Shown here: piece by piece, positions 30,098 to 60,517 of the stretch
How the letters are laid out: each line of letters starts with the position of its first letter
Position numbering within the stretch: position 1 is the stretch's first letter
IMG/VR virus record: IMGVR_UViG_3300023184_000024
Span: 288,755-352,754 of that record
DNA: 64,000 nt
Direction: 5' to 3' (one strand)
The notes under the pieces: generated by a model
Seen by the model: the letters and a program-made list of their open reading frames with translations, nothing else
Told to the model about the DNA's origin: nothing
The model's database searches: none
Made by a program: the position numbers and the translations under genes

Positions 30098-30100
30098 TTC

Positions 30101-30129
30101 TTGCATTTTTTAATAGTTTATTATATACT
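30101..30129 (+). promoter_or_regulatory. sigma70-type promoter for porin
   Basis: TTGCAT-N17-TATACT; AAGGA SD downstream. Confidence 0.55.
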
Positions 30130-30183
30130 ATTTGTCTACGTGGATATATAAACACGTTCTCTGAACATTTAAAAGGAAATTTT

Positions 30184-35200: not shown

Positions 35201-36751
35201 ATGATTTTAACTATATTAATGTTTGTTGTGGCTTTGTGCTTGAGTGGTGTGGCCGCATTTTATTCTATTGTAGGGCTTACTGCTATTTTTGCCGCCGCAG
35301 TTACGCCTATTATTTTAATGGGCAGTATTTTAGAAGTGGCCAAGCTCACAGTCACAGTTTGGTTGCACGACTACTGGCATCGTATTCGCTGGTTAATGAA
35401 GGTGTATTTGTGCTCAGCAGTGGTTGTATTGATGATAATCACCAGCATGGGCATATTTGGATTTTTGTCAAAAGCGCACAGCGACCAAGGCATGGTGTCG
35501 GGTGATGTACTTGCCAAGATCAGTGTATATGATGAAAAAATTAAAATCTCAAAGGAAAATATAGATGCAAATCGCCGGGCACTTAAACAAATGGATGAAG
35601 CTGTGGACCAAGTTATGGGCCGAAGCACAGATGAAAAAGGTGCAGATAAAGCTGTACAAATCCGCAGGACCCAACAGAAGGAACGTGCTAGACTCCTTGC
35701 CGAAATTGAAGCCGAACAGAAAAAAATTACAGCACTTAATGAAGAACGAGCCCCTATTGCTGCCGAGGTACGCAAGGTTGAGGCAGAAGTCGGTCCGATA
35801 AAATACATTGCCGCATTGATTTACGGTGATGATCCAGATGCCAATTTACTAGAACGTGCAGTACGTTGGGTGATTATACTATTGGTGGTGGTGTTTGATC
35901 CTTTGGCAGTGATGATGTTGCTGGCCGCAACTGAAAGTAGAAAATGGTTGCGCGAAGATAAACTCAAGTACCCTCCTGATGACGGTCCTTTAACTGAAGA
36001 ACAAATCGAACAAATCAAGGAATCTGCCAAAGAAGACTTGCCCACTAGTGAGCTGGTAACCAAAGATGAGCTATTCCCAGTGGACCCTTCCCCACCAGGG
36101 TGGATGTACAACACCACTACAACAACATATCCTTCTACCGAAGAAGAAGTTGAAGAGTTGACACAAGAGTTTGATCGTAGCAAACACGCATACTTAGACA
36201 AGCCGTTTGTGCATTTTGAAAACCTCACGCCTATGGTGGCAAAAAAACAACCTGAAATCACTGCGGAGGAAGTCAGCATTGCTGTATCTACTCCAGAAAA
36301 GGATGAGGATGAGGATGGTGACAACGACAGTGACGTGGTAAAAATGGCCAAGACATTGTGGAAACAAGCAAACCCAACTAGCACTCTTAAAGATCAACGA
36401 AGACTATTACAATTCAAAGCAATAGATCATCTTCCTTGGTATGACTACATTGAACAAGCTGAGAATGAAGTTATTATACCGTTTGGTGACCGCTTACCCG
36501 ACACCGGTGAGAAAGCTAGCAAAAAAGGCAATCAATATATACACACGGGATATTTGCCCACTAAGTTATTCAAATACAATGGATCTAAATGGATTGAGGT
36601 TGACAAAAACCTCACAGACCGTTATGCTTACAATGATGCCTACATAGATTTTTTAATAAAAAAAGTTGGCACAGGTGAATATGACCCCGAGCTATTAAAT
36701 GATAGCGAACGAACTCAACTAGAACTTAAACTTAAAAGAGAAATTATTTAA
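35201..36751 (+). CDS. Membrane protein with coiled-coil and acidic domains
   Basis: Three N-terminal TM segments, a long heptad region, a fourth TM, and an acidic linker. Confidence 0.65.
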
Positions 36752-37950
36752 TGTCAGACACAGCACTTCAACAATACCAACATAAATGTAGTTTTTGCGG
36801 CAAAGAAAAAGACATCGTTAACAAGTTAATTGTCAGTGATGCAGTTGCTATTTGTAATGAATGCGTTTTTTTATGTCAAGACTTACTAGTAGATAAACCG
36901 TTATCAGAAGAAACAAACAGCAGTGACTCGTTGGATCCAATGAAACTCAAGGCGTATCTTGACCAGTATGTGGTTGGTCAAGAGCAGGCAAAAATAGTAT
37001 TAAGTGTGGCCATTGTTAATCATTATAAAAGAATTAATAAGTCTTCAGAAGGCCCAAATATTAGTAAAGCCAACATTTTAATGATTGGCCCCACGGGCTG
37101 TGGCAAAACATTACTGGCCAAAACTGTGGCCAAATACCTTGACGTGCCGTTTGTAATAGGTGATGCTACCAGTATTACCGAAGCTGGCTACGTAGGTGAC
37201 GATGTTGAAACACTGATTAGTCGACTGCATGCAGTGGGCGGCAACGATGTTAGCAAGACACAACGTGGCATTGTTTTCATTGATGAAATTGATAAAATTA
37301 GTCGAAAAAGCGAAAGTACCAGTATCACACGTGATGTGTCTGGCGAAGGTGTTCAGCAGGCATTGTTAAAATTAGTTGAAGGAACTGTTTGCCGTATTCC
37401 GGCCGGCGGCGGCAGGAAGCATCCTGGTGGAGACATGATTGAAATCGATACATCAGACATATTGTTTATTGCAGGCGGTGCCTTTGTTGGATTAGAAAAG
37501 ATTATTAAAAATAGAACACAGGGCACATCTATTGGATTCAACACACTTATATCAGACAACAAAGAAGTTGATATTTCACAAAGTTCACCCGATGACTTGG
37601 TCAAGTTTGGTATGATTCCTGAGTTTGTTGGGCGTTTCCCAAGCACAGTCACACTCAAAGATCTTGAACACAGTGACATGATTAGAATCTTAACTGAAAT
37701 AAAAGACAACTACATTGATCAATATCAGTGGTTGTTTTCCCAGGACTCGATTGATCTGAATTTTAATAAAGAATCCATTGAAGCACTGGTGACACGAGCA
37801 TTGGAATCAGGCACTGGAGCTCGGGCACTGCACACTGAGCTAGAACGTGCGTTGATGCCGCACATGTATAAACTAAGAGACTACCAGGCTCGGGGCATTT
37901 CCGAGGTCAACATTGTACCTGAGTTTATAAGTACTCCTACTTCACTGTAA
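36751..37950 (+). CDS. clpX: ATP-dependent Clp protease ATPase ClpX
   Basis: CSFC..CNEC Zn domain, [30 protein letters not shown] loop, TGARAL. Confidence 0.96.
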
Positions 37951-47241: not shown

Positions 47242-48645
47242 ATGATAAAAAGAATTGCCCTGAGCTTGATCAGCCTTGCGCTGATAGCGGTAGCCACTGC
47301 ACAAACAACAACCGGAACGTCGGGTACCTCTGGCGGCACAACCACTGGAACTACTACAGTTATTAACCAAGGTAGCTATGATTCCAAATCATTGGTAGAT
47401 ACCAATAGTACTAGTAACAGCGTGAGCACAATTAACACAAACAACGTTAACAGTGGCACTATTACCAACAACAATAACACCAGTTTAACTGGTGGAACAA
47501 CAAATACCAACGTTAACACAAATACCAACAATGGTACAATGACCAACAACAATAACAACAACAACGTTATGAGTGGCAGTGTTACCTATACAAACAACAA
47601 CAACAATGTAAACAGCGGTACTCAAACGTTCAACAACAATAACGTCAACACTGGTACAATGACCAATAATAACAACAATGTCAATACCAGCACCAGTTCG
47701 AGTACTAATGTTAACACCAATAACAATGTCAACAGCGGTACACAAACGTTCAACAATAATAATGCTAGTACATCATCCAGCACAGCAGTTAATACTAATA
47801 ACAATATTAACAGCGGCACAATGACTTACAACAACAACAATGTCAGCTCTAGTACAAGTACCAATACAAATAACAATAACAATGTCAGCACAAGTACCAA
47901 CACAAATTATCAGTATGGTACAATGACCAATAATAACAACAACGTGAATACCAGTACCAGTGCCAACACCAATAACAATGTTAACACAGGTGACATGACC
48001 AACCGTAATATCAACAATACCACTGCTACAACCAGCAACACCAACACCAATGTTAACAGTGGCACAATGACCAACATTAATCAGAATACCAACAATGGTA
48101 CAATGACCAACAACAACAATAACACTAGTACAAGCACCAATGTCAATCAAAATGCCAACGTTAATCAAAACATCAACAGTGGTGAAATGACTAACAAGAA
48201 TATCAACGAAACAACTATCACGCAAAAAGTTATTCAACCTCCACCAACTGCTGTTGCTCCTGCAATGATGAGTGGTGGCAATGCCGATTTATGTAGTACT
48301 GGTACCAGTGGTAGTGTTCAGACTCAAATATTTGGAGTAGGTGCCGGCAGTACCAGTCGTGATATGAATTGTGAACGATTAAAGTTAAGTAAAACTTTGT
48401 ATGATATGGGTATGAAGGTTGCCGCTGTGGCCACAATGTGTCAAGACCGTAGAGTATTTGATGCCATGTTGGCCGCTGGCACACCCTGCCCGTTTGAAGG
48501 CAAGATTGGTGAACAAGCCAAGGCTGCATGGGAATCAAATCCAGAAAAGTTGCCAAAACTTGAAGAGGAAAAACTAGATGACACTTACAAGAAAGTTGGC
48601 TTCGGCGCTTTGCTTGGCGTTCTCATTCATAACGCTTTCAAGTAA
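47242..48645 (+). CDS. Secreted Asn/Thr-repeat protein with Cys-containing C-terminal domain
   Basis: Signal peptide, roughly 260 aa of N/T/S repeats, then a 4-Cys domain (DLC..NCERLK..MCQD..TPCP). Confidence 0.75.
   Translation: MIKRIALSLISLALIAVATAQTTTGTSGTSGGTTTGTTTVINQGSYDSKSLVDTNSTSNSVSTINTNNVNSGTITNNNNTSLTGGTTNTNVNTNTNNGTMTNNNNNNNVMSGSVTYTNNNNNVNSGTQTFNNNNVNTGTMTNNNNNVNTSTSSSTNVNTNNNVNSGTQTFNNNNASTSSSTAVNTNNNINSGTMTYNNNNVSSSTSTNTNNNNNVSTSTNTNYQYGTMTNNNNNVNTSTSANTNNNVNTGDMTNRNINNTTATTSNTNTNVNSGTMTNINQNTNNGTMTNNNNNTSTSTNVNQNANVNQNINSGEMTNKNINETTITQKVIQPPPTAVAPAMMSGGNADLCSTGTSGSVQTQIFGVGAGSTSRDMNCERLKLSKTLYDMGMKVAAVATMCQDRRVFDAMLAAGTPCPFEGKIGEQAKAAWESNPEKLPKLEEEKLDDTYKKVGFGALLGVLIHNAFK
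47400..48200 (+). repeat. Coding low-complexity repeat (NNNN-VNSG-TMT / TQTF units)
   Basis: Recurring AAC/AAT runs and GGTACAATGACCAA copies. Confidence 0.9.
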
Positions 48646-51088
48646 TGCTCAAGTAGATAGTACCACCGGTAATTTAATAAATTACGGTACATCTGCCACG
48701 GATACAACCAGTACTTGGAACAACGGCGTCTACGTTAACCAGCTATGCTTTGCTGCCGGCCAACCAGGAAACTGTGGACCAAACCCTAGTGTTCGTCAAG
48801 GTGGCTATATCAACTTCAGTTACGGCACAGCTGATCTTAATCAAATTGTCAACATAAACCGAGCCCTGGCTGCTGGCGGCACAGGAGTACAACTCAGTGG
48901 ATTTAACTTTGGATTTACAGCAAAGAATGGTAATGGCTGGGACGATGCTAGACAGGATTATCTAGCCGCTTATGTTAAACTATATGGCAGTGGCGGCAAT
49001 TTAGTTGCCAATTATGATTACTCAGCACAGACTAACAGAAAATACAATTGGACTAACTTTAGCTTTAACGAAACATTTGCCAACCCGGCGGCCGCTTCAC
49101 AGTATAGTAACGCACAAGTGGGCTTTGTAGGCAGAGACAATAACTTCTGGGCAGGAAATTATGGTCCTGAAATTTTTAATGTTAGTTTTAGTTTGAAATA
49201 TCGTGTTGATCCTTGTGCTCAGAATCCTGCCTACAGTCCTAGTTGTTCTGGATTTAACACAGTTACAACCAGTAACAATTTGTTTAATTCTAGTGTATGG
49301 GGAAGTTCCGTAAATCAAGCAATTGCCATTAATACCGCATTAAAGAACGGCGGCATTGGTGCCACAGTGCACGGCTTTAACTATGGATTTGATTATACAG
49401 TAGGTGAAAGTTGGTTCGGTTGTACAGCTACCAATCAAGATGGATCTTGTAGTTGGTATATGAATATTCCTGCTCAAGTAAGTGCCACAGCACGACTTAC
49501 CAACAGTAGCAATCAAACAATATATTCAAAAGGTCATACATTAACCGGTGACGGCACCAGCGGATCGGTGAGTGGGCAGTATTTGTTGACAACCAGTTTG
49601 AATCAAACATCCTTGGGCAATGTCAGCTTAACGGGTAGTACTTCGGGTACCGGATCATCCATTGGTAATTTTTCAGCAAGTTTGATTTATACTGCTGACC
49701 CTTGTGTGTCTAACCCATTGTACAATGCATCTTGTTCAGGATATGCCGTTGCTTTTGCTAAAAATATGTTATTGGGCTCGACAGTTGCCAGTGCGTCTGG
49801 TCCTATAGTGGCTTCGAGTGGTTCAATAAGTTTGTCAACAACATCAACAGGTTCGTTAGAACCAGCACCAACATCGGGACCAACAGAACAAAGCGGACCA
49901 ACACAACCCCAACAAACATCCGGACCTGCCCCAAATCCCACACAAGATTCGGGTCAAACTACAGCACAATCGGATCCTGCACAACCAAGTCCAACACAAG
50001 CAGGTCCTGCTCCCACAAGTCCGCAACCTGCCGGCGGGCCTCCGCAGACTGCAACAGCAAGTGCGCCAAATTCATCTGGACCTAGTGGAGGAGGCTCAGC
50101 AGGTCCAAGTAAATTAGCAATGAGTGTGGTTAAAACAGCACAGGCAAATGACAAAGCTACGCAAAATGCCGCAGTACAGAATGCCGCTAAAACTCTAGAA
50201 GGTTCAATACAAAGTTCGCAAGCCGCTAGTAATGCCGCAATTAGCATGAATCAAGATATGAGTGCTAACAGTGCTGTTGCAGCCGCAAACTTTGCTGGCC
50301 AAACAACACAGGCTAGTCAGCAAACTGCTATACAAGCAACTCAACAAACATCACAGTCTAATGTGCAACAGACGCAACAAAGTTCTAGGGTAACACAGCA
50401 AGTACAGCAACAACACGATGTACAAGTATCAATGATTCAATCAACTAACGGAGTTTCACAAATTCAACAGTTTATATATACTCCTCCGGTACAGCAACAA
50501 ACTGATACACTGTCTGCACAGATTAGTATGTTAAAACCACCCGCTCCACTGGTCATTGAAATGCAACAACAAACTAGTGGCGGCACTGGTTTAACTGTTA
50601 GTCGCAACTTGTTTGCTTACAATCCATTAATGTCATCAAATACTGCCAATATGTCAGCACTATTGCCTGCTCCTCAACCTGTGTATCAACCTAGATTAGA
50701 TACTAGACAAAGTGAAGTGGAAACGCCACAAATGCCGATTGCCAGTTTTGGCGGTGCAGGCCGTGCCGGTAATCCGTTGTCAGAAATACTGATGCAACAA
50801 AAATTTGAAATCATGCAGGATAATATAGCGCAACCGGGCAGTTTGGTGAATAGAAATGCGCTACCAAATGAGCTGGCAGGTGGCATTGATATTGCTAGTA
50901 TAGCCAGTGTGCCCCAGGGATTTAATGCTTATTCATTTGTGTTAAAAGATGCGTCGTTCTATGAGCCAAAAGAAGTTTATAAAAATCAACGCACAGTTGA
51001 CAATGAACGAGTGTTGCGAGGATTGACCAGAGGTAGTGACAGCTTACATCAACGCATGGTTGATCAACAGTATAAGATAGGAAATTAA
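48578..51088 (+). CDS. Large secreted protein: two tandem beta domains plus Pro/Gln-rich regions
   Basis: Signal peptide; duplicated Q.x.IN.AL..GG.G..GFN.GF and DPC..NP.Y..SCSG motifs. Confidence 0.7.
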   Translation: MTLTRKLASALCLAFSFITLSSNAQVDSTTGNLINYGTSATDTTSTWNNGVYVNQLCFAAGQPGNCGPNPSVRQGGYINFSYGTADLNQIVNINRALAAGGTGVQLSGFNFGFTAKNGNGWDDARQDYLAAYVKLYGSGGNLVANYDYSAQTNRKYNWTNFSFNETFANPAAASQYSNAQVGFVGRDNNFWAGNYGPEIFNVSFSLKYRVDPCAQNPAYSPSCSGFNTVTTSNNLFNSSVWGSSVNQAIAINTALKNGGIGATVHGFNYGFDYTVGESWFGCTATNQDGSCSWYMNIPAQVSATARLTNSSNQTIYSKGHTLTGDGTSGSVSGQYLLTTSLNQTSLGNVSLTGSTSGTGSSIGNFSASLIYTADPCVSNPLYNASCSGYAVAFAKNMLLGSTVASASGPIVASSGSISLSTTSTGSLEPAPTSGPTEQSGPTQPQQTSGPAPNPTQDSGQTTAQSDPAQPSPTQAGPAPTSPQPAGGPPQTATASAPNSSGPSGGGSAGPSKLAMSVVKTAQANDKATQNAAVQNAAKTLEGSIQSSQAASNAAISMNQDMSANSAVAAANFAGQTTQASQQTAIQATQQTSQSNVQQTQQSSRVTQQVQQQHDVQVSMIQSTNGVSQIQQFIYTPPVQQQTDTLSAQISMLKPPAPLVIEMQQQTSGGTGLTVSRNLFAYNPLMSSNTANMSALLPAPQPVYQPRLDTRQSEVETPQMPIASFGGAGRAGNPLSEILMQQKFEIMQDNIAQPGSLVNRNALPNELAGGIDIASIASVPQGFNAYSFVLKDASFYEPKEVYKNQRTVDNERVLRGLTRGSDSLHQRMVDQQYKIGN

Positions 51089-51292: not shown

Positions 51293-51913
51293 ATGACAGA
51301 AGAAATCAAAGATGTAAATGCCAAAGTCGACGAACTTGAAGCAGCCGCAAAGAAGTATGCTAGTAAAGATACAGTTATCAGTATCGGTGGATATGAATTT
51401 ACCCCCGCTAAACTAATGGTGGCAGCCACAATTGTATCATCTATATTAGGTGGACTGTACGGCACATTCGAAGTGTACAAAGACTATGTCGGTATGAAGA
51501 AAAAGATTGCTGAATACTCTGCCCCAGACCTAAGTGGGTTTGACAAGCGTTTAGCAGTCATTGAAGAGAATAGTGCCAAGACCAGCGACTACACACGTGA
51601 TATTAAAACAGACTTAAAAAACGATTTACGTCGTAACGAAACAGTTACTGAGCAAATAGAACGCAGTGTTAAAAATACACAACGTGAAACTGAAGGTGAA
51701 ATGCGTGATATGCGCAAGGCGGTAAGAGAAGACTTGGAAAGAGCAAGAAACGAAGCCAACGCAATTCGCAAGGACATGGAATCAACACGCAAGGAAATCA
51801 ACAGCGAATTTACTGCGGCTCGTAGAGAAATAAACCGTGAAGTAGAAACACTAAAGAGAGAAGTTGACAGTAAAATACAAAAAGCCATTGACAATCCCCT
51901 GGCCAACAAGTGA
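51293..51913 (+). CDS. Single-TM coiled-coil protein
   Basis: AGGAG SD, TM at about aa 42-60, long heptad C-terminus ending DNPLANK. Confidence 0.7.
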   Translation: MTEEIKDVNAKVDELEAAAKKYASKDTVISIGGYEFTPAKLMVAATIVSSILGGLYGTFEVYKDYVGMKKKIAEYSAPDLSGFDKRLAVIEENSAKTSDYTRDIKTDLKNDLRRNETVTEQIERSVKNTQRETEGEMRDMRKAVREDLERARNEANAIRKDMESTRKEINSEFTAARREINREVETLKREVDSKIQKAIDNPLANK

Positions 51914-52594
51914 TTATTGTTTGAGAACAGACCGTACCAGGCTGTCTATGCTGTTGATCAACGGAACATTTTTATAATGTGTTTCTTTGACAGCCAACGG
52001 TATCTCTGTACAGCCTAGTACTACGGCATCGACGCCCCAGGGAATTAACTGATCAATTGTGTTTAATAGCAGATCGTGTGCTTCATCAATCTGGCCTGAC
52101 TTAACAAGATCTATCGCGGGTTGTACAACGTTGTCCATTTGATGTGTGTCGGGCGTGATACATTTCCATCCTGACTTGCCCAAGTAGTCCTGGTATAATC
52201 CCAAACTCATTGTGGCTTTTGTGCCTATTATTCCAACGGTGCCACTGTATATTTTTAATGCTGTTAATTCTTCTGCCACACTGCCCACAATGTGTGTGAT
52301 TGGCACGCCAAGTTGGCTCAACCTGTCAAACCAAAAATGTGCTGTATTGCATGGGATTACAATATGGTCACACCCTGCATTTTTTAAACCCAATACGCCA
52401 GCTTTGAGTTTGGCCCAGGGGAGATCATCTCTATTAATTAAACTGGTACTACGATCTGGCACAGTGGGGTCATTCCACAACACAAAAGGTATGTGTTCTT
52501 GATCGCAAGTGGCCGGAGTTTGTTGAATTAATCTTGTGACAAACTCTGCTGATGCTGCCGGCCCCATGCCACCTAGGATGCCTAGACGTTTCAT
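51914..52594 (-). CDS. Aspartate/glutamate racemase (RacX-like)
   Basis: LGILGGMGP, IPCNTAH, LGCTEIP (both catalytic Cys present). Confidence 0.93.
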   Translation of the reverse strand: MKRLGILGGMGPAASAEFVTRLIQQTPATCDQEHIPFVLWNDPTVPDRSTSLINRDDLPWAKLKAGVLGLKNAGCDHIVIPCNTAHFWFDRLSQLGVPITHIVGSVAEELTALKIYSGTVGIIGTKATMSLGLYQDYLGKSGWKCITPDTHQMDNVVQPAIDLVKSGQIDEAHDLLLNTIDQLIPWGVDAVVLGCTEIPLAVKETHYKNVPLINSIDSLVRSVLKQ

Positions 52595-53196
52595 TTTTTA
52601 TTGAATAACAAGCTGGAAGCAATGCCCATTGCGGTCTGCATCTCTTCTACGTTGTCTGGTTGCTCTTTCCAGCCCACACTAATTTGTCCGATGAATACGC
52701 CAGGTTCAGCGGGTACACTGATACGGCACATATAGTTTATACCATAGTCTTTGTACACAAAGCCAATGAGACTCTGCGGTTTAAGATATGGACTGCAGGG
52801 AATCTTACCTGACATTAAACCAATAACGTCATTGTTGTTATTGTAGTCTTTGGAAAACAATCCAACTTGCAGGCCGTCGTGATTCTTATCTCTTCCTGCA
52901 CCACGTGTGACCAAATAAACAACTTTACGAGTGTTGATTAATGTGTTTACTTCTAGAATGGCAATCATTTCTGCATTGGTATTCTTCAACAAAAAGTTTG
53001 CGGCTTCTTCGTACTTGCCATTCATCCTGGGCAAAGCTTGTTGAGCACGATAAGTTGCCAAAAAGGCATCTTTTTCAGTGTAAACAATCCAGCCGCCAAA
53101 CCCTAATATGCAAAGTAACACAACCGCAAACAAGCGGAATGGACTGGAACCAATCCATTCCAACAGCGTTAACAGTGTAGCTTTAAGTTGTTCCAC
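52591..53196 (-). CDS. T4 gpT-like holin (single TM plus periplasmic GAF-like domain)
   Basis: RLFAVVLL..KDAFLATY, INYM..FIGQISVGW and A..LL C-terminus parallel T4 T as I recall it. Confidence 0.6.
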   Translation of the reverse strand: MEQLKATLLTLLEWIGSSPFRLFAVVLLCILGFGGWIVYTEKDAFLATYRAQQALPRMNGKYEEAANFLLKNTNAEMIAILEVNTLINTRKVVYLVTRGAGRDKNHDGLQVGLFSKDYNNNNDVIGLMSGKIPCSPYLKPQSLIGFVYKDYGINYMCRISVPAEPGVFIGQISVGWKEQPDNVEEMQTAMGIASSLLFNKK

Positions 53197-54460
53197 CAGC
53201 GGCTACCTCTTTGTCACAGACAAATGCTGTGACTGCTACGTTGCCGTGTACATGACTTGCTGTGCGAATCATATCCATTAATGGATCAACTGCGATCAAC
53301 AATACTAACACCGCTTCGCTGGGCAGTTTCAACAAGTCACAAACAACTGCCACTGTGGCCACTGTAAGGATACCTGTTGTGCCTGCACTGGCTAAACCAG
53401 CAAGGATACTGCCTAATAGTACAACCAACAATCCTGTAACACCCAGTGGTGCGTCATAGATGTTGGCAATGAATACTGTGGCAATGGCGTAGTAAACAAT
53501 GCTGCCAATACGGTTAACAGTAAAACTCAGTGGAACTGTAAGTTCAACTCCGCCTTTGTCAAAGTGTAGTTTGTGTAACGCCTCTTGTGCATATGGAATG
53601 CAAGCTAAACTACTACGTGAACTAACAGCAACAATTAATGTTTCTTTGGTTTCTTTAATAACAGTAGCAAGACTTAATCCGCTACGTGCCCAAATTACAG
53701 CAGTACCTGCGGCAATAACCAAGAAGCCACCGATAGCTTGTTGCATTACAAAGTCAAACATGGTCATAAAAATACCAACACCTACTTTACCAACCTGTGA
53801 CGAAATCATTGCTAATAGTGCTATTGGTAGGAAGTAGTTTAGGAATTTAAAGATACTGATACTGGCTTGCTGGACACTCTTTAGTACTTCAACCAACATG
53901 CGCTGACCTTCAGTCTTTAAGTGACCAAGGGCTACACCAAAGATCAAACAGAAGATAACAATCTTCAAACTTTCACCATTGTTTAGTGTGTTGAAGATAT
54001 TTTCTGGAATAAACTTCTCTGCCATTTTACCTGCATTAACTGGTGCGGCTGTTGGCATTGGTTCTTTAAGAGTAATGTTTAAATCAGTGCCACTGTCTTT
54101 ATCGTTGACCAATACACCAAGTTGTGTTTTCTTCTCAGGGGTCATTTCAGTGCCAGTGATCAAAACTGTACCTACTCCAATTGTAGCGGCAATAAACATA
54201 CTGCTGACAAAGCCAATGATGATTCTACGAATTAACGCCTGACTGCCTTCTTTTTGTAGCAAGCCAATAATACCAACTAGAATAGTAGCAAGTAAGAATG
54301 GTAGTACAACTACCTTTAATAAACTAATATAGATACTGCCAATGCTGTCCAGTCCAATACTAAATGCTGGAGCATAAACTCCGCTTAGTATACCTACAAT
54401 AATTGATCCTAAGATGGTCCAAGGACTTGTCAGGAAACTTTTTAAATGTGATGTTGTCAT
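53183..54460 (-). CDS. Dicarboxylate/amino acid:cation symporter (DAACS family)
   Basis: IPENIF, SSRSS, LASAG, D.LMDMIRT; multi-TM. Confidence 0.9.
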   Translation of the reverse strand: MTTSHLKSFLTSPWTILGSIIVGILSGVYAPAFSIGLDSIGSIYISLLKVVVLPFLLATILVGIIGLLQKEGSQALIRRIIIGFVSSMFIAATIGVGTVLITGTEMTPEKKTQLGVLVNDKDSGTDLNITLKEPMPTAAPVNAGKMAEKFIPENIFNTLNNGESLKIVIFCLIFGVALGHLKTEGQRMLVEVLKSVQQASISIFKFLNYFLPIALLAMISSQVGKVGVGIFMTMFDFVMQQAIGGFLVIAAGTAVIWARSGLSLATVIKETKETLIVAVSSRSSLACIPYAQEALHKLHFDKGGVELTVPLSFTVNRIGSIVYYAIATVFIANIYDAPLGVTGLLVVLLGSILAGLASAGTTGILTVATVAVVCDLLKLPSEAVLVLLIAVDPLMDMIRTASHVHGNVAVTAFVCDKEVAAGGTT

Positions 54461-54469
54461 GATGTGTCC

Positions 54470-55288
54470 TTATTTCTTTTCTGCTTTGTAACGATCCATT
54501 AACTTTTTAGTGTCAATATTATTGTATTCATTTTTAATAACGTAATTAACAATGCTTAACAATTGAATTGCTCGGGGATTCACAGCAATAGCAATGTTAT
54601 CTACGCTGTCGCTGATTGTAATTGACTTAGTAGTAATTGCCGCGTCGGGCTTTTCAAAAGCAATTTTCTTGATTTCAAATTCATCACGGTAAGCGGCAGC
54701 AATGTCGCCACGTGTGACTTTGTCAATGATCACATCCCATTTTTCTTCAGGAAGGAATACTGCGTTGGGAAAGTTTACACGAGCAAATGTATCGTAACTT
54801 GAGTTCTTGATAAAACTTATCTTGCCATTAAAATCTCTAATGACTTGGTATACTTCACGTCCTTGGCTGTTCTGACTTAGCCACAAACGATTAATAACCA
54901 AACTCTGTCTTAGTTTAATGTAAGGATCGCTGAATCTAACAACTTGTAAACGTGGCCCAGTTACGGATAGTTTACTAACTGCAATATCTGCTTTACCGTC
55001 ACGAACCTGTTCTACAACTTCAGCAAAACTTTCAGCATCGCGTCTGAACTGCACTGGCACTCCGAGTAGGACACTAATTCGTCGAGCAATCTCAACGTCG
55101 AGACCTCGAATATTATCCTCGTCACCACTGAAGAATGGAGGATTGTCTTTTTTGGTCATTGCCACAACAAGCACATTGGCTTTTTTGATTGCGGCAATAT
55201 CTGCGGGCAGAGGTACGGTTGACGTTGGTAACTGTGCAGACGCAACAGAGGCCAACAACATTAGTACAGAGGCGAGTAATTTTTTCAT
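54470..55288 (-). CDS. Periplasmic amino-acid binding protein (SBP family 3)
   Basis: Signal peptide MKKLLA.., DNPPF, GLDVEIA, ADIAVS.LSVT..R..FSDPY. Confidence 0.88.
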   Translation of the reverse strand: MKKLLASVLMLLASVASAQLPTSTVPLPADIAAIKKANVLVVAMTKKDNPPFFSGDEDNIRGLDVEIARRISVLLGVPVQFRRDAESFAEVVEQVRDGKADIAVSKLSVTGPRLQVVRFSDPYIKLRQSLVINRLWLSQNSQGREVYQVIRDFNGKISFIKNSSYDTFARVNFPNAVFLPEEKWDVIIDKVTRGDIAAAYRDEFEIKKIAFEKPDAAITTKSITISDSVDNIAIAVNPRAIQLLSIVNYVIKNEYNNIDTKKLMDRYKAEKK

Positions 55289-55349
55289 TTGTATGTGTCC
55301 ATAATGTAGGTATTTAATACCCAATGTTATTTATGTTTTTAGATGTTAC

Positions 55350-55378
55350 AAAAAAAAGTCCCTTGCGGGACTCTTTTT
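55350..55378 (-). terminator. Rho-independent terminator (possibly bidirectional)
   Basis: On the - strand AGTCCC-GCAA-GGGACT followed by a T run. Confidence 0.8.
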
Positions 55379-55619
55379 ATTTTGCCGCTGTTTTGGGCGC
55401 TTTGGGTTTTACAGGTGCCTTGGGCTTTGGTTCTGCCTTGGGTGTTGCTTTAGGTGTTGCTTTAGGTGTTGCAGGCGCCTTTGGCTTAGCAGGTGCTGCC
55501 ACTGATGCTTCGGTGCCAGCAGGCACAATTTCAACATTAGGAGCAGATGCTTCTACTTTGTATGGTGCTTCTACAACCGTTGGGGTCGGCTTAAAAAAGT
55601 CTAAAATTTTCTTTAACAT
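55377..55619 (-). CDS. Small Pro/Lys/Ala-rich (histone H1-like tail) protein
   Basis: PKAT/PKAP repeats; SD (AGGAG), TAAATA and terminator all on the - strand. Confidence 0.75.
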   Translation of the reverse strand: MLKKILDFFKPTPTVVEAPYKVEASAPNVEIVPAGTEASVAAPAKPKAPATPKATPKATPKAEPKPKAPVKPKAPKTAAK

Positions 55620-55653: not shown

Positions 55654-56688
55654 CTAACTTGCAGTATCGAGCGTAGATTTAATATCTGCAATCATGCGGG
55701 CCACCCAAGCTGTTTTCATTGTTAGATCATAGTTGTGTTCAACAATGGGCTGACACAGTTGATAAATCTTGGCTTGTTCTTGTGTCTGCAAATATGCAAC
55801 TTGCTCTAACATCAATTTTACCCTGACCGATATATCGGGCTCCGAGTCGTAACTTTCATCAATGATGCCATGAAATGTTTGAAATCCAAGCTTTCTTAAA
55901 TTATGCAGATAGTATTGCCCACCGGCAACCACAAACAATCTACGACACATCATTGGTTTTATAATTTTTTCAGTAAAAAAACTAAAACTATTTTCACTTT
56001 GTGTTTCGGCAATTAAACTGTAGGCGCTGTGATTATAAACATCAATTGGCACCAATTGACTTAGACTAACAATGGTAGAATCTACCACAACTTCGGAACC
56101 TGTAAATGTAATTTCATTTTCAGGCAAATCAACAGGCCAAATGAATTGGCTCGACGAGTAATTTCTAAGATCAAGATCCACGTTGGTTGGATAATAAGTT
56201 ACTATGTTCTGACTGTGGTCCATTGAGTCATAAACCATTGATCTATGCACCTTGCGCCGGCCCAACAAAACATCAAAGAATTTGTCCTTGGGCAACACGT
56301 TGCTGACTTTGGGCAACCAATTTTGCTGTGTGTGATAAAAATCAGTGGTGCTCCAAAAGAAATAATAATGAAACTTGACCTGACTATGCCCGGGAGTCCA
56401 ATTTAAAATGCCGGCAATGTAAAAAACTACGTTTGGCCTATCAAATTTTTTGCACCAATGATCGTCGATGAATTCGGGCAAGAACACCAAGGCCTTGCTG
56501 GCATGCGACACTATTTTTTCCAGTTCAGATTCAGTGTCATTGCCAAAGTCTTGTGTTTCCCACAAAGCAACACACTCATTGCTGGGCAATGACAACCAAA
56601 CGTCAAGATCATTGACTATGTTGCCATCAACGCCGGTTTCTTCAAACCAGTATTGTAGATTTGGATTGCTGATATAAATGTGTTTCAC
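55654..56688 (-). CDS. GT10-like ('TEK' motif) putative glycosyltransferase
   Basis: IAET..FTEKIIKP..GFQTF..DESYD. Confidence 0.55.
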   Translation of the reverse strand: MKHIYISNPNLQYWFEETGVDGNIVNDLDVWLSLPSNECVALWETQDFGNDTESELEKIVSHASKALVFLPEFIDDHWCKKFDRPNVVFYIAGILNWTPGHSQVKFHYYFFWSTTDFYHTQQNWLPKVSNVLPKDKFFDVLLGRRKVHRSMVYDSMDHSQNIVTYYPTNVDLDLRNYSSSQFIWPVDLPENEITFTGSEVVVDSTIVSLSQLVPIDVYNHSAYSLIAETQSENSFSFFTEKIIKPMMCRRLFVVAGGQYYLHNLRKLGFQTFHGIIDESYDSEPDISVRVKLMLEQVAYLQTQEQAKIYQLCQPIVEHNYDLTMKTAWVARMIADIKSTLDTAS

Positions 56689-56751
56689 AGTGTATTTACT
56701 GCTGGTCGTTATAGTAAGTGTAAATCAACAACAACGGGTGCTAACTACATA

Positions 56752-57459
56752 ATGATTGAATTTATAACAATGTTGGTAATGACACACATTACCATTCTAT
56801 GTGTCACATTGTATCTGCATCGTAGCCAAGCTCACAAGTCAGTTACGTTCCATCCAATTGTTGCACACGCCATGAGATTTTGGCTATGGATGACTACCGG
56901 ACAAATTACCCGACAATGGGTAGCGGTACATCGCAAGCATCACAGATTCACAGAAGTACACGGTGATCCACACAGCCCGCATGTGTTTGGTTTTTGGCAT
57001 GTGCTGTGCAAAGGTGCTGTGCTGTATCATACTGCCAGTAAAGACTCGGCAATGGTGGCACAATATGGTGCTGGCACACCCGATGACTGGATTGAACGCA
57101 ATGTTTATTCCAAGCATAGTAGACTGGGCATTGCGTCAATGCTGTTGATCAATATAGCTGTGTTTGGTGCATGGGGACTACTAATATGGGGCATACAAAT
57201 GATATGGATCCCATTCTGGGCCGCCGGTGTCATCAATGGAGTGGGACATTGGCTGGGGTACCGCAATGGCGAAACCAAAGACCACAGTCAAAATATCAGT
57301 CCCTGGGGTATCGTTATTGGCGGAGAAGAACTACACAACAATCACCACATTAACCCTGCCAGCCCCAAATTGAGTAGCAAGTGGTGGGAGTTTGATATAG
57401 GATGGGCGTGGATACGTGTGCTAGAGATGGTCAAGTTGGCCAAGGTGCGCACAGTTTAG
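56752..57459 (+). CDS. Fatty acid (acyl-CoA/lipid) desaturase, DesA-like
   Basis: His boxes HRSQAH, HRKHH and HNNHH; DPHSP. Confidence 0.93.
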   Translation: MIEFITMLVMTHITILCVTLYLHRSQAHKSVTFHPIVAHAMRFWLWMTTGQITRQWVAVHRKHHRFTEVHGDPHSPHVFGFWHVLCKGAVLYHTASKDSAMVAQYGAGTPDDWIERNVYSKHSRLGIASMLLINIAVFGAWGLLIWGIQMIWIPFWAAGVINGVGHWLGYRNGETKDHSQNISPWGIVIGGEELHNNHHINPASPKLSSKWWEFDIGWAWIRVLEMVKLAKVRTV

Positions 57460-57872: not shown

Positions 57873-57901
57873 TAGACTAATAAATCCTGTTTGTGTATAA
57901 T
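57873..57901 (+). promoter_or_regulatory. sigma70-type promoter
   Basis: TAGACT-N17-TATAAT with TG extension, ending 7 nt before the ATG at 57908. Confidence 0.6.
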
Positions 57902-57907
57902 AGATAC

Positions 57908-58150
57908 ATGAACAGGATTTTTCTTTTGTGCTTGCTATTTCTAGTTGGGTGCGCTCAGGTACCCAGAATGCCACCGGATGTGGCAGCCATGCCCGACGAC
58001 TGCGCAAATCGACAAGCCATCATCAGATGGTTAGATTCTTTGGTTCAGGTTCCTAAATCAACTTTTGAAAATGAGCATGAATATGAACAAACTCGCAGTA
58101 AAATCAAAGCTCGCATTTGGAGCATTCGTTACAATTGTCAGCGTGTTTAA
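57908..58150 (+). CDS. Small lipoprotein
   Basis: Lipobox LVGC; two further Cys. Confidence 0.65.
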   Translation: MNRIFLLCLLFLVGCAQVPRMPPDVAAMPDDCANRQAIIRWLDSLVQVPKSTFENEHEYEQTRSKIKARIWSIRYNCQRV

Positions 58151-58421
58151 TGTAGGATGCGCCAATTACTCGCCGGTGATGAGTTCACACCTGGACTCTT
58201 TTCAAATCGATTGTAGAATTAAAGAACAGCAAGTTCGATTTTTGCAGTCAATGAGAAACACAAACAATGAAAAGTTCAATGCCAGGGCCACTAATGCAGT
58301 GATGCCCTGGACAATGATCACTGACTCATCAAATTACCAGCATCGACAAGGTGTACAAACTGGATACAACGACTGGGTCATCAATCAACTGTTGCTTAGA
58401 TTAGGATATGATTGCCCATGA
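58083..58421 (+). CDS. Putative lipoprotein
   Basis: Hydrophobic N-terminus with VGC; DC..QVRFL..C pattern similar to the previous gene. Confidence 0.55.
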   Translation: MNKLAVKSKLAFGAFVTIVSVFNVGCANYSPVMSSHLDSFQIDCRIKEQQVRFLQSMRNTNNEKFNARATNAVMPWTMITDSSNYQHRQGVQTGYNDWVINQLLLRLGYDCP

Positions 58422-58981
58422 AAAAACATTACATTGCAATTGCTGTGTTGATTTCAATGCCAGCTTGGTCAAACAATTGTGTGATGCAGGAACGTACCGT
58501 TACTCAAAATGATGTAAAAATTTTAGAGAGAAGCACCATACGTCGTGATGTGGTCCCTGCACAAAACGGGCGTAAGTGCATAGTGGATTTTCGTGCTCGA
58601 GTAGGCAGTGAATGGCACACAGCATTTGGTGAACACATCTGGCCTGGAGATCGTCCCAGTGAAGAAGCCTGTTTGGTTGCAGTAAAACGAGCCGAAGACA
58701 GTGTTCGCGAACGTGTGGGTCGTACATCATCAATGAGTGAAAGAATTTTGGTTTGTAAAGATCGTCCCGAATTAGAAACACTGCGCCAAACCCAAATTGG
58801 CACAGTTGGTGATGCAGGGCAGTTTAGAATCCATCCCAATTACCCCAATCGATTTTATCACAACGGTGCCCAATGCCGTTGGTTTGTAGAACCAATGTTC
58901 AATGGTAGAGATATCCAAAATTTCCAAGGTGTGGCCTGCGAAGTTCGGGACAACAAGTGGGTAGTTGTGGACAAATTTTAA
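58418..58981 (+). CDS. Secreted Cys-containing hypothetical protein
   Basis: Signal peptide; six Cys. Confidence 0.65.
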   Translation: MKKHYIAIAVLISMPAWSNNCVMQERTVTQNDVKILERSTIRRDVVPAQNGRKCIVDFRARVGSEWHTAFGEHIWPGDRPSEEACLVAVKRAEDSVRERVGRTSSMSERILVCKDRPELETLRQTQIGTVGDAGQFRIHPNYPNRFYHNGAQCRWFVEPMFNGRDIQNFQGVACEVRDNKWVVVDKF

Positions 58982-59938: not shown

Positions 59939-60517
59939 ATGACACAAAGCAAGGACACTGAGGAAGATTACGTAAGCCCGGGACAAAGCCTGCTGGAAGC
60001 AGGCATGTATACACTCATGGGACCCATTGACGATGAGCTAGTGAAGCCTGTGATCGAGTGGATTTTACATGCCAATCATGTTGTTAAAAGAAAGAAAAAA
60101 GAACTTTTATTAATGATATGTAGTGAAGGTGGTGACATGAGCTCGGCATTTGCATTAATTGATGTCATGCAAAGTTCAGGCATACCTATTAAAACAGTGG
60201 GACTTGGTCAAATTGCATCGGCTGGACTGTTGATCTTTTTGGCTGGTACCCCGGGCCGCAGGACCTTGACTCCCAACACCAGTATATTAAGTCATCAATT
60301 TAGCTGGGGTAGTGACGGCAAAGTGCATGAGTTATTTGCTACCATGAAAGAGTTTGAATTAACTCAAAAGCGCATGATAGCGCACTATGTTCGATGCACC
60401 AATCTCAGCGAAGATCAAATACGTAAAAATCTATTGCCGCCACATGATGTTTGGCTTGACGCAAAAGAAGCATTGAAGCTCAACATCTGCGATCATATCA
60501 GTTTGGTAAATCGTTAA
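59939..60517 (+). CDS. clpP: ClpP-like protease subunit
   Basis: ICSEGG, GQIASAG (Ser), ILSHQ (His), DVWLDAKEAL..CD. Confidence 0.85.
   Translation: MTQSKDTEEDYVSPGQSLLEAGMYTLMGPIDDELVKPVIEWILHANHVVKRKKKELLLMICSEGGDMSSAFALIDVMQSSGIPIKTVGLGQIASAGLLIFLAGTPGRRTLTPNTSILSHQFSWGSDGKVHELFATMKEFELTQKRMIAHYVRCTNLSEDQIRKNLLPPHDVWLDAKEALKLNICDHISLVNR

What the first reader, a model, noticed from the sequence alone, without database searches (positions are those of the whole stretch)
51914..55316. Late operon joining a binding protein, a DAACS transporter, a gpT-like holin and an amino-acid racemase: possible D-amino-acid-linked lysis control
Seen: four minus-strand genes run against the local gene direction, behind a TAAATA late box (55311-55316) and insulated upstream by a terminator. 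Their junctions are tight: a 9-nt gap, a 14-nt overlap and an ATGA overlap. Known: T4 holin T has a periplasmic GAF-like domain through which lysis inhibition is signalled; family-3 binding proteins bind polar amino acids; two-Cys racemases make D-Asp/D-Glu. No ABC permease or ATPase is nearby. Inference: the unit could produce a D-amino acid, sense it in the periplasm and couple that to holin timing (an infection-density signal), or remodel peptidoglycan before lysis. The simpler alternative is nutrient uptake with a holin gene that merely sits alongside.
Basis: partly seen in the sequence, partly recalled or inferred. Interest (0 to 1): 0.85.

Follow-up and report, generated by a model that had tools for sequence, protein, structure and literature searches.

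The report
Holin gene wired into nutrient-uptake operon
In a group of giant freshwater phages, the gene for a probable cell-bursting protein (a distant relative of the T4 holin) always lies directly downstream of genes for an amino-acid-binding protein and a membrane transporter, which suggests, but does not prove, that nutrient uptake and the timing of cell lysis are linked.

Summary
The four minus-strand genes, their tight junctions and the upstream terminator are real. The flagged "late box" is not the conserved element. A T4-late-type ATAAATA core sits 12 nt further upstream (55328-55334). It is present ahead of the first gene in 20 of 20 related loci.

The 201-aa protein matches no Pfam model, but it is a remote homologue of T4 holin T:
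- Profile-profile comparison gives 95% probability.
- It has the same architecture and a GAF-like fold.
- It lies beside endolysins in small phages.
- It is the only T-like gene in the T4-like phage S13.

The racemase keeps both catalytic cysteines and scores as cysteate racemase CuyB. The transporter keeps the residues that bind an acidic amino acid but has altered cation sites.

Across 76 related loci the transporter gene always has the binding-protein gene upstream (66/66) and the holin-like gene immediately downstream (69/69). The racemase is less constant (59/64). The block recurs among unrelated flanking genes.

Co-transcription from one late promoter is well supported by sequence. Any functional coupling between uptake and lysis is unproven. 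The D-amino-acid signalling idea remains speculative.

The parts
55350..55378 (-). Intrinsic terminator that ends the upstream 80-aa gene and insulates the operon. It is an A-run, GAGTCCC-GCAA-GGGACTC stem-loop and T8 run, so it could act in both directions.
   Evidence: Terminator scan. RNA fold dG -15.5 kcal/mol, z = -5.9, 0 of 200 shuffles as stable.
55327..55335 (-). T4-late-type promoter core CATAAATAA (ATAAATA at 55328-55334), 39 nt upstream of the binding-protein ATG.
   Evidence: ATAAATA lies within 150 nt upstream of the first gene in 20 of 20 related loci, against a background of 0.027 per 150 nt. It occurs only 6 times in the window on both strands. Five copies are intergenic and all six lie 15-70 nt upstream of a same-strand gene start. 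No internal copy lies between the SBP start and the end of X in 24 loci.
55307..55323 (-). Its significance is doubtful.
   Evidence: Fold dG -6.9 kcal/mol for the leader, z = -1.9. A hairpin with a different sequence lies at the same place in L021.
54470..55288 (-). Secreted family-3 solute-binding protein, 272 aa, with a signal peptide.
   Evidence: Pfam SBP_bac_3, 63 bits against a cutoff of 26.4. The closest solved structures are amino-acid-binding proteins, E = 1e-14. T110, P112, R113, R201 and D202 are invariant in 24 relatives and dN/dS is 0.10.
53183..54460 (-). DAACS/SDF-family secondary transporter, 425 aa. It keeps the residues that bind an acidic amino acid but has altered cation-site residues.
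   Evidence: Pfam SDF, 220 bits. Alignment to aspartate transporter 9bgz shows DMIRT for DMART, NRIGS for NMDGT, His for Asn and Asn for Asp in TM8. These residues are invariant across 24 relatives and dN/dS is 0.08.
52591..53196 (-). Protein X, 201 aa: an N-terminal helix, one TM helix and a GAF-like extracytoplasmic domain with two invariant cysteines. It is a remote homologue of T4 holin T and the probable holin or holin partner. It has a GTG start with its own AGAGG ribosome-binding site inside the 3' end of the transporter gene.
   Evidence: No Pfam hit. AF2 pLDDT 96.7. Foldseek hits to the T4 T periplasmic domain with target-normalised TM 0.65-0.72 and to annotated class III/T holins. 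hhalign against a T-holin profile gives 95% probability, E = 3.7e-8. Lysis-gene neighbours in small phages. It is the only T-like gene in T4-like phage S13. dN/dS is 0.07.
51914..52594 (-). PLP-independent two-cysteine amino-acid racemase, 226 aa, closest to cysteate racemase CuyB and to aspartate racemases. Its start overlaps the X stop (ATGA).
   Evidence: Pfam Asp_Glu_race, 141 bits. NCBIfam NF052483 cysteate racemase, 213 bits against a cutoff of 190, and TIGR00035, 161 bits. Best PDB hits are aspartate racemases, E = 1e-41. C82 and C195 are invariant in 17 relatives.

Best explanation
This is a late-transcribed, mobile four-gene cassette of a clade of roughly 350-kb freshwater phages distantly related to T4.

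Proposed mechanism:
1. One T4-late-type promoter (ATAAATA, 55328-55334) drives a single mRNA. A strong terminator insulates it from the gene upstream.
2. The first product is secreted to the periplasm and binds an alpha-amino acid.
3. The second is an inner-membrane DAACS carrier for an acidic amino acid of the aspartate, glutamate or cysteate class. Its non-canonical cation sites suggest it is not sodium-coupled in the usual way.
4. The fourth is a cytoplasmic racemase that interconverts the L and D forms, so that either form taken up can be used. If the substrate is cysteate, the product would feed a host D-cysteate lyase.
5. The third, X, is a divergent member of the T4 holin T lineage. It accumulates in the inner membrane during late infection and acts as the phage's holin or as a close holin partner.

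The binding-protein and transporter genes sit between the late promoter and the holin gene, and every junction is too tight for a separate promoter. Uptake capacity and holin supply are therefore produced together, in fixed proportion, during the late period.

What is shown: gene content, residue conservation, remote homology of X to T, linkage without exception, and promoter and terminator anatomy.
What is inferred: late timing, substrates, direction of transport, and hole formation by X.
For: Identity of X:
- hhalign of the 67-sequence X family against a 7-sequence T-holin profile gives 95% probability and E = 3.7e-8 over X 9-191 and T 5-194.
- With the domain alone, P = 1.2e-4, against P >= 0.056 for 10 column shuffles.
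- X G170 and W176 align with T-family invariant G186 and W192, and both families share an I-N-Y-M motif just before a conserved cysteine.
- The AF2 model has pLDDT 96.7 and shows one TM helix plus a GAF-like domain.
- The T4 T periplasmic domain has the highest target-normalised TM-scores among the top PDB hits.
- Family members abut endolysin or holin genes in small phages.
- T4-like phage S13 has no T-profile hit (best E = 0.25, against 3.7e-111 for the T4 control) but has one X gene (E = 5e-45).

Operon anatomy:
- Junctions in 24 loci: SBP to SDF -4 to +15 nt, SDF to X -38 to +14 nt.
- ATAAATA lies upstream in 20 of 20 loci, with no internal copy in 0 of 24.
- The terminator is strong.

Linkage:
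- SBP upstream in 66 of 66 loci, X downstream in 69 of 69, racemase in 59 of 64.
- About nine different flanking contexts.

Function of the other genes:
-.
- The published CuyB cluster pairs the racemase with an SDF importer (PMC11193023).
- The window also encodes an outer-membrane porin, which fits a phage that remodels uptake.
- All four genes have dN/dS of 0.07-0.13.
Against: - No endolysin or spanin was found next to X in this window, and only 64 kb of about 350 kb is visible.
- In several small phages another holin-type gene sits beside X, so X could be an antiholin or co-holin rather than the pore former.
- No expression data exist; no RNA run was listed.
- A nutrient importer switched on only late in infection is not obviously useful.
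- If the functions were independent, the unbroken linkage of SBP-SDF to X would be unexplained except as inheritance of a whole transcription unit.
- No CuyA-type lyase was found among the ORFs scanned.
- The transporter's altered cation sites leave its mode of transport, and even its direction, open.
Confidence: 0.5

Rival explanations
1. Ligand-gated lysis. The periplasmic binding protein plays a role like T4 antiholin RI. With or without its ligand, it binds the periplasmic GAF-like domain of X and delays or triggers hole formation, so lysis timing follows the supply of an amino acid outside the cell. The transporter and racemase set the local concentration of that ligand.
For: - X is homologous to T, whose periplasmic domain is the docking site of a secreted regulator (PMC11413866).
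- The binding protein is secreted into the same compartment.
- The SBP and SDF genes are never found without X (66/66 and 69/69), while X does occur without them. That is the pattern expected if they act through X.
- Lone X genes are followed by a 98-aa secreted protein of RI-like size and location.
- Late co-expression fits a lysis function better than a nutritional one.
Against: - There is no evidence of any kind for contact between the proteins.
- The binding protein keeps the invariant Arg and Asp expected of an ordinary amino-acid-binding protein.
- A transporter is not needed for a sensor.
- The racemase is dispensable in several lineages.
- Linkage could simply reflect inheritance of one transcription unit.
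Confidence: 0.2
2. Tripartite transporter. In this clade X has been recruited as the small membrane subunit of a binding-protein-dependent DAACS transporter. It would be analogous to the small subunits of TRAP and TTT systems, docking the binding protein onto the carrier. It need not act as a holin here.
For: - The three genes are always adjacent, in the same order, and translationally coupled.
- The combination of binding protein, large permease and small membrane protein mirrors TRAP and TTT systems (my own knowledge).
- The transporter's cation sites are remodelled and invariant, as might be expected if its energy coupling or gating had changed.
Against: - Module-linked and lone X genes are intermixed in the X tree and are 65-75% identical, which suggests one conserved function that does not depend on the transporter.
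- X keeps the family-wide invariant residues.
- No binding-protein-dependent DAACS transporter is known (my own knowledge).
- No cellular counterpart of the cluster was found.
Confidence: 0.12
3. The genes are adjacent with no functional relationship. A nutrient-uptake gene pair was inserted once between an existing late promoter and the holin gene, and the block has since been inherited and recombined as a single transcription unit.
For: - The lone X of the L028 type has TATAAATA directly upstream, consistent with insertion of SBP-SDF between the promoter and X.
- All module X genes form one clade with the lone ones.
- The loci sampled are relatives, not independent origins.
Against: - The block is kept intact across about nine different flanking contexts and down to 51-55% SBP identity. 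Meanwhile the racemase next door is lost, displaced or swapped.
- So recombination is frequent here, yet it never separates SBP-SDF from X.
Confidence: 0.15

Closest known systems
T4 holin T (class III holin, Pfam PF11031 Phage_holin_T) and its T5 and Vibrio phage relatives
   Same: - Similar length (201 against 218 aa).
- Short N-terminal segment, one TM helix and a C-terminal GAF-like domain of about 150 aa outside the membrane, with conserved cysteines.
- Profile-profile homology at 95% probability.
- Fold match with target-normalised TM 0.65-0.72.
- Sits beside endolysins in small phages, as T5's holin does.
- Takes the place of t in T4-like phage S13.
   Different: - No Pfam, NCBIfam or direct sequence match; none of the 67 family members reaches the T model even at E <= 1.
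- The conserved cysteine pair is placed differently (C134 and C157, against C175 and C207 in T4 T).
- Here it is embedded in an operon with transport genes rather than standing alone or with lysis genes.
- Hole formation is untested.
T4 lysis-inhibition pair: holin T with secreted antiholin RI
   Same: A T-type membrane protein is encoded together with a signal-peptide-bearing periplasmic protein.
   Different: - The periplasmic partner here is a 272-aa solute-binding protein, not a small RI-like protein.
- No interaction has been shown.
- No RI homologue was found in the window.
Cysteate dissimilation cluster of Bilophila wadsworthia (SDF transporter, CuyB racemase, CuyA D-cysteate sulfo-lyase, RidA; PMC11193023)
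   Same: - A PF01177 two-cysteine racemase scoring above the NCBIfam CuyB cutoff.
- It is encoded together with an SDF-family transporter.
   Different: - No CuyA or RidA was found.
- A binding protein and a holin-like gene are present.
- The setting is a phage, and the transporter is only distantly related to cellular ones.
- The substrate is not established.
Orphan phage solute-binding proteins such as cyanophage PstS (my own knowledge)
   Same: A phage-encoded periplasmic binding protein with no cognate ABC permease or ATPase in the phage, presumed to boost nutrient capture during infection.
   Different: - Family 3 (amino acids) rather than phosphate.
- Encoded with a secondary transporter and a holin-like gene, under a late-type promoter.
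Archaeal and bacterial aspartate/glutamate transporters GltPh, GltTk and GltP (DAACS)
   Same: - Full-length SDF fold match.
- The serine-rich HP1 motif is conserved, and so are the TM8 Asp and Arg that hold the substrate's amino and distal acidic groups.
   Different: NMDGT becomes NR(I/L/V)GS. The TM8 Asn and Asp of the sodium sites become His and Asn. All of these changes are fixed across the clade.

Membership tests
T4-type holin T (Phage_holin_T, class III holin) | Match to the curated family model PF11031 | tested here: not met
   No Pfam hit for the window protein. None of the 67 family members hits PF11031 or any GAF model at E <= 1. A T-holin HMM scores it at E = 0.14.
T4-type holin T (Phage_holin_T, class III holin) | Architecture: small N-terminal cytoplasmic segment, a single TM helix and a large periplasmic C-terminal domain (PMC11413866) | tested here: met
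   The AF2 model (pLDDT 96.7) has helix 2-16, TM helix 19-40 and a globular domain at 56-201. The invariant cysteine pair suggests a location outside the cytoplasm. The topology itself is inferred.
T4-type holin T (Phage_holin_T, class III holin) | Detectable homology to bona fide T holins | tested here: met
   hhalign of profile against profile gives 95.0-95.7% probability, E = 3.7e-8 to 8.7e-9, over about 179 columns. The domain alone gives 55% probability and P = 1.2e-4, against shuffles at P >= 0.056. Single-sequence tests were negative.
T4-type holin T (Phage_holin_T, class III holin) | Fold of the periplasmic domain like that of T4 T | tested here: met
   Foldseek hits 6px4_T (TMt 0.72), 6psk_T (0.67) and 6pxe_F (0.66) at E around 5e-5. 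Many other GAF domains score similar E-values, so the fold alone is not specific. The viral library returns annotated class III/T holins.
T4-type holin T (Phage_holin_T, class III holin) | Association with lysis genes, or standing in for the holin | tested here: inconclusive
   Met in small phages and by replacement of t in S13. Not met in this window, where no endolysin was found among the scanned ORFs. Some small phages also carry a second holin-type gene beside X.
T4-type holin T (Phage_holin_T, class III holin) | Forms lethal membrane holes that release endolysin | not testable with these tools
   Needs an expression and lysis assay.
DAACS / SDF transporters (PF00375) | Full-length match above the curated cutoff, and conserved substrate-binding residues | tested here: met
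   220 bits against a cutoff of 27.9. D396 and R399 (DMIRT) and the SSRSS motif of HP1 are invariant.
DAACS / SDF transporters (PF00375) | Canonical sodium-site residues (NMDGT motif; TM8 Asn and Asp) | tested here: not met
   NRIGS replaces NMDGT, and H403 and N407 replace Asn and Asp. All are fixed in 24 relatives.
Family-3 solute-binding proteins (PF00497) | Domain match, export signal, and residues that hold the alpha-carboxylate and alpha-amino groups | tested here: met
   63 bits against a cutoff of 26.4. There is a signal peptide. R113 in the S-x-T-x-x-R motif and D202 are invariant. Assigning their roles rests on my knowledge of HisJ/LAO, not on a test.
Family-3 solute-binding proteins (PF00497) | A cognate ABC permease and ATPase encoded nearby | tested here: not met
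   None among the ORFs scanned in the window or in the related loci.
Cysteate racemase CuyB (NCBIfam NF052483, equivalog) | Score above the curated cutoff, and both catalytic cysteines | tested here: met
   213.1 bits against a cutoff of 190. The PCNTAH and GCTE motifs are invariant. The margin over the cutoff is small, and aspartate racemases are the best solved relatives.
Cysteate racemase CuyB (NCBIfam NF052483, equivalog) | Pathway partner CuyA (D-cysteate sulfo-lyase) present | tested here: inconclusive
   No PLP-enzyme hit among about 50 window ORFs scanned. Most of the 350-kb genome, and the host, are not visible.
T4-type late transcription unit | A TATAAATA-like core upstream of the first gene, recurring at gene starts in the genome | tested here: met
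   The window has CATAAATA (7 of 8 positions). ATAAATA lies upstream in 20 of 20 loci. All six copies in the window lie 15-70 nt upstream of same-strand gene starts.
T4-type late transcription unit | A gp55-type late sigma factor and late timing of the transcript | not tested
   No gp55 homologue was looked for beyond a BLAST of S13 proteins against the window, which found none. No RNA data were listed.

The most novel reading that the evidence does not exclude
A solute-binding protein acts as a ligand-dependent antiholin. The secreted amino-acid-binding protein docks on the periplasmic GAF-like domain of a T-type holin, so that lysis timing in these abundant giant phages follows the availability of an acidic amino acid (or its D-form) outside the cell. 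The co-encoded transporter and racemase would tune that signal. This would be a lysis-inhibition system that senses a nutrient rather than superinfection.
Probability: 0.2. Interest if true: 0.9.

Novelty: new variant of a known kind. Interest (0 to 1): 0.66.

Why it matters
1. **A hidden branch of the T-holin lineage.** Standard family models miss it: about 112 clusters at 50% identity, filed as PHROG "unknown function". It supplies a holin candidate for many small phages and for at least one T4-like phage that lacks t.
2. **A candidate link between nutrient uptake and lysis.** These giant phages are very common in lake metagenomes. In them, the only T-like gene seen in the available sequence is locked behind a binding-protein gene and a transporter gene under one late promoter. 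If the linkage is functional, it would be a new way for a virus to couple lysis timing to nutrient conditions, or else a new kind of binding-protein-dependent transporter. Both readings can be tested with four cloned genes.
3. **An addition to phage auxiliary metabolic genes.** Even if the linkage has no functional meaning, the cassette adds an acidic-amino-acid or sulfonate uptake-and-racemisation set, and the same genome also encodes a porin.

Tried and rejected
- **Direct comparisons of X with T4 T** gave nothing: BLASTP E = 0.14, family profile against the single T sequence 1.4% probability, PDB sequence searches with the protein and with the profile, and Pfam on every family member. Only profile against profile, plus structure, showed the relationship.
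- **The search for related loci with the diverse X alignment** failed because it had no conserved stretch.
- **PADLOC:** no defence-system match for any of the four proteins.
- **The flagged TAAATA as a promoter** was rejected on frequency and replaced by the neighbouring conserved ATAAATA.
- **Cellular origin of the cluster:** the homology search for the transporter was saturated by the same phage clade. The Atlas gave only broad families. The bacterial-genome scan found only a probable phage fragment binned into a MAG and one 24% match.
- **Isolated phages:** hits to the transporter and racemase were almost all bacterial contigs filed as phage.
- **Expression evidence:** no RNA run was listed.
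- **The 98-aa secreted ORF after lone X genes** was a lead for an RI-like partner, but it has no relative in the window.
- **A second X-like or T-like gene in the window:** none found.
- **Peptidoglycan remodelling by D-Glu or D-Asp** was rejected as unsupported. There are no murein-synthesis genes nearby, and the racemase is dispensable in several lineages.

Full report
**What is in the sequence**

Positions 51914-55324 hold four consecutive minus-strand ORFs.
- Three match Pfam models above their curated cutoffs: SBP_bac_3, SDF (the DAACS family) and Asp_Glu_race. The 201-aa third ORF matches nothing.
- The first gene more plausibly starts at the ATG at 55288, which gives a typical signal peptide.
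- A strong intrinsic terminator lies upstream: dG -15.5 kcal/mol, z = -5.9, followed by eight U.
- No terminator-like structure follows the racemase gene, which abuts a convergent plus-strand gene.

**The genome**

- The window encodes ribonucleotide reductase, an ATP-dependent DNA ligase, helicases and a tailspike-like protein.
- It shares UvsW, gp41, ligase and NrdAB homologues with the T4-like Cronobacter phage S13.
- Identical and near-identical copies of the 201-aa protein lie on viral contigs of 345-353 kb.
- No record in the phage collection is close at the DNA level.
- So this is an uncultured jumbo phage, distantly related to T4. It has many relatives in metagenomes, and one relative is a contig binned into a Lac Pavin MAG.

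**The promoter**

That 9-mer occurs once in the window against 0.9 expected, and exact TATAAATA occurs once against 2.7 expected. The box also lies inside a weak leader hairpin.

Aligning the upstream regions of relatives showed a different, conserved element:
- ATAAATA lies within 150 nt of the first gene's start in 20 of 20 loci. The background is 0.027 per 150 nt. In most loci it reads TATAAATA or CATAAATA and lies 5-8 or 27-46 nt from the ATG.
- In the window it is CATAAATAA at 55327-55335.
- ATAAATA occurs only six times in the whole window on both strands. Five copies are intergenic, and all six lie 15-70 nt upstream of a same-strand gene start, including the tailspike-like gene.
- No locus has an internal copy between the first gene's start and the end of the third gene (0 of 24).

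The motif therefore behaves as a real promoter element with the T4 late core, and the four genes share it. Late timing is an inference from T4 biology; no RNA data were listed.

**The 201-aa protein, X**

An exhaustive search found about 112 clusters of relatives, nearly all 190-240 aa long. A 67-sequence alignment shows two near-invariant cysteines and one near-invariant glycine.

Negative results:
- Direct sequence tests against T4 T were negative.
- No family member reaches the Pfam T-holin model or any GAF model, even at E <= 1.

Four independent lines tie X to T:
1. **Structure.** The model is very confident (pLDDT 96.7). It has an N-terminal helix, one TM helix and a GAF-like domain. The T4 T periplasmic domain has the highest target-normalised TM-scores among the top PDB hits (0.65-0.72). 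The viral library returns annotated class III and T holins over their full length.
2. **Profile-profile homology.** I built a profile from seven true T holins, from T4 to T5 and a Vibrio phage. Against it, X gives 95% probability and E = 3.7e-8 over almost the whole length.
   - With the TM region removed, the signal drops to P = 1.2e-4 but stays far above ten column-shuffled controls.
   - X G170 and W176 align with T-family invariant G186 and W192.
   - A shared I-N-Y-M motif precedes a conserved cysteine in both families.
3. **Genomic context in small phages.**
   - 3 nt after a GH108 endolysin.
   - Overlapping a Phage_lysozyme gene in three contigs.
   - Abutting a GTA_holin_3TM gene.
   - Two genes from a lysozyme.
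   - Five genes from a GH108 endolysin.
   - Next to a LysC-type spanin.
4. **A natural replacement.** T4-like phage S13 has a lysozyme, an rIII-like gene and rIIA/rIIB. It has no T-sized gene at the t position and no T-profile hit anywhere in its 182 kb (best E = 0.25; the T4 control scores 3.7e-111). It has exactly one X gene (E = 5e-45).

I conclude that X is a distant member of the T-holin lineage and a lysis protein. Some small phages carry a second holin-type gene beside it, so "holin or holin partner" is the safe wording.

**The other three proteins**

- **Racemase.** It keeps both catalytic cysteine motifs, which are invariant across relatives. It scores 213 bits on the NCBIfam equivalog for cysteate racemase CuyB (cutoff 190) and 161 bits on the general aspartate-racemase subfamily. 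The paper that defined CuyB reports it next to an SDF transporter proposed to import cysteate (PMC11193023).
- **Transporter.** Aligned to an aspartate transporter, it keeps the TM8 Asp and Arg that bind the substrate's amino and distal acidic groups. NMDGT is replaced by NRIGS, and the TM8 Asn and Asp by His and Asn. These changes are fixed in 24 relatives under strong purifying selection (dN/dS 0.08). It is a working variant, not a decaying gene.
- **Binding protein.** Its nearest solved relatives are amino-acid-binding proteins. It keeps an invariant Arg in the S-x-T-x-x-R motif and an invariant Asp in the second lobe. From my knowledge of HisJ/LAO, these hold the alpha-carboxylate and alpha-amino groups.

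Together these point to an acidic alpha-amino acid (aspartate, glutamate or cysteate) without deciding among them.

**Linkage**

- Starting from X, 34 viral loci at 55-100% identity were mapped. Starting from the transporter, 76 loci were mapped.
- Wherever there is room on the contig, the transporter has the binding-protein gene upstream (66 of 66) and X immediately downstream (69 of 69).
- The junctions stay tight throughout: -4 to +15 nt and -38 to +14 nt.
- The flanking genes fall into about nine unrelated arrangements.
- The racemase is less constant. It is present in 59 of 64 loci and absent from the most divergent group. In one locus a PA14-domain gene displaces it by 2.2 kb. In another it is only 62% identical while the other three proteins are 94-97% identical.
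- X also occurs alone, next to a T4-type DNA polymerase or next to RNase H and RNA ligase. These lone genes nest among the module-linked ones in the X tree.
- One lone type has TATAAATA directly upstream. That fits insertion of the binding-protein and transporter genes between a late promoter and the holin gene.
- No cellular counterpart of the cluster was found, and no isolated phage carries it.

**Interpretation**

Shown:
- The gene content and the conservation of key residues.
- X's relationship to T.
- A shared promoter and terminator.
- Linkage of the first three genes without exception.

Inferred:
- Late timing.
- The substrates and the direction of transport.
- Hole formation by X.

My best reading (confidence 0.5) is a late transcription unit that makes an acidic-amino-acid uptake and racemisation set together with the phage's T-type holin, in fixed proportion.

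The asymmetry that the uptake genes never occur without X, while X does occur without them, keeps two more interesting readings open:
- A binding protein that gates the holin, as RI gates T (0.2).
- X recruited as the small subunit of a tripartite transporter (0.12).

Adjacency with no functional link, inherited as one transcription unit, is also possible (0.15).

The racemase is the most dispensable gene, and its closest characterised relative is catabolic.

Noticed in passing
window 30094-31089 (+): The phage encodes a Gram-negative outer-membrane porin (Pfam Porin_4, 57.6 bits). With the binding protein and the transporter, the genome then has uptake components for all three envelope layers. 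It also implies a diderm host.
   Followed up: no
window 36751-37950 (+) and 59939-60517 (+): A ClpX-like AAA+ ATPase with the ClpX zinc finger, and a ClpP protease, are encoded about 22 kb apart. A 1080-aa S8 subtilase-domain protein lies at 26855-30097.
   Followed up: no
window 56680-57459 (+): A DesA-family fatty-acid desaturase (NCBIfam 400.7 bits, cutoff 400) lies close to the operon. A desaturase homologue recurs near the cassette in several relatives (L015, L021, L024, L026, L030, L035), on varying sides and strands.
   Followed up: partly
window 48578-51088 (+): An 836-aa protein with a signal peptide and a long low-complexity region rich in Pro, Thr, Gln and Ser. It has no family match. 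Homologues recur next to the cassette in some relatives.
   Followed up: no
window 55377-55619 (-): An 80-aa protein that is mostly Lys, Ala and Pro repeats (histone-H1-like or AlgP-like composition), lying between a minus-strand 344-aa ORF of unknown function and the terminator.
   Followed up: no
window 57893-58981 (+): A run of three small exported proteins. Two have lipobox-like signals (LFLVGC and FNVGC), and one has a weak match to a 17-kDa outer-membrane antigen. They might be spanin-like or exclusion proteins.
   Followed up: no
L025:7311-8063 (+): One relative carries a second, divergent X paralogue (29% identical, 250 aa, with a Lys/Pro-rich N-terminal extension) directly after the racemase, so that phage has two T-like proteins in one operon.
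   Followed up: partly
L029:3204-3500 (+), also L028 and L038: Lone X genes are followed, with an ATGA overlap, by a 98-aa protein that has a signal peptide and two cysteines. Its size and location resemble T4 antiholin RI. Distant copies lie a few kb from the cassette in some module loci, but there is none in the window.
   Followed up: partly
Cronobacter phage S13 (KC954775), S13_076 at 53403-53984: This T4-like phage, and probably its relatives LPCS28 and Citrobacter phage Ci1, lacks a recognisable t gene. It carries an X-family gene, annotated as hypothetical, on the late-gene strand near gp24. That gene is a likely unannotated holin.
   Followed up: yes
window 51293-51913 (+): A 206-aa protein with one TM segment and a long charged coiled-coil tail, whose stop codon abuts the racemase stop. 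Homologues travel with the cassette in several relatives (cluster 4). No function is assigned.
   Followed up: no
MT837652.1 (phage collection, human faecal contig): A racemase homologue (32% identical) lies about 360 nt upstream of an SDF transporter homologue, echoing the published cuy-type pairing. The contig is probably bacterial, not phage.
   Followed up: no
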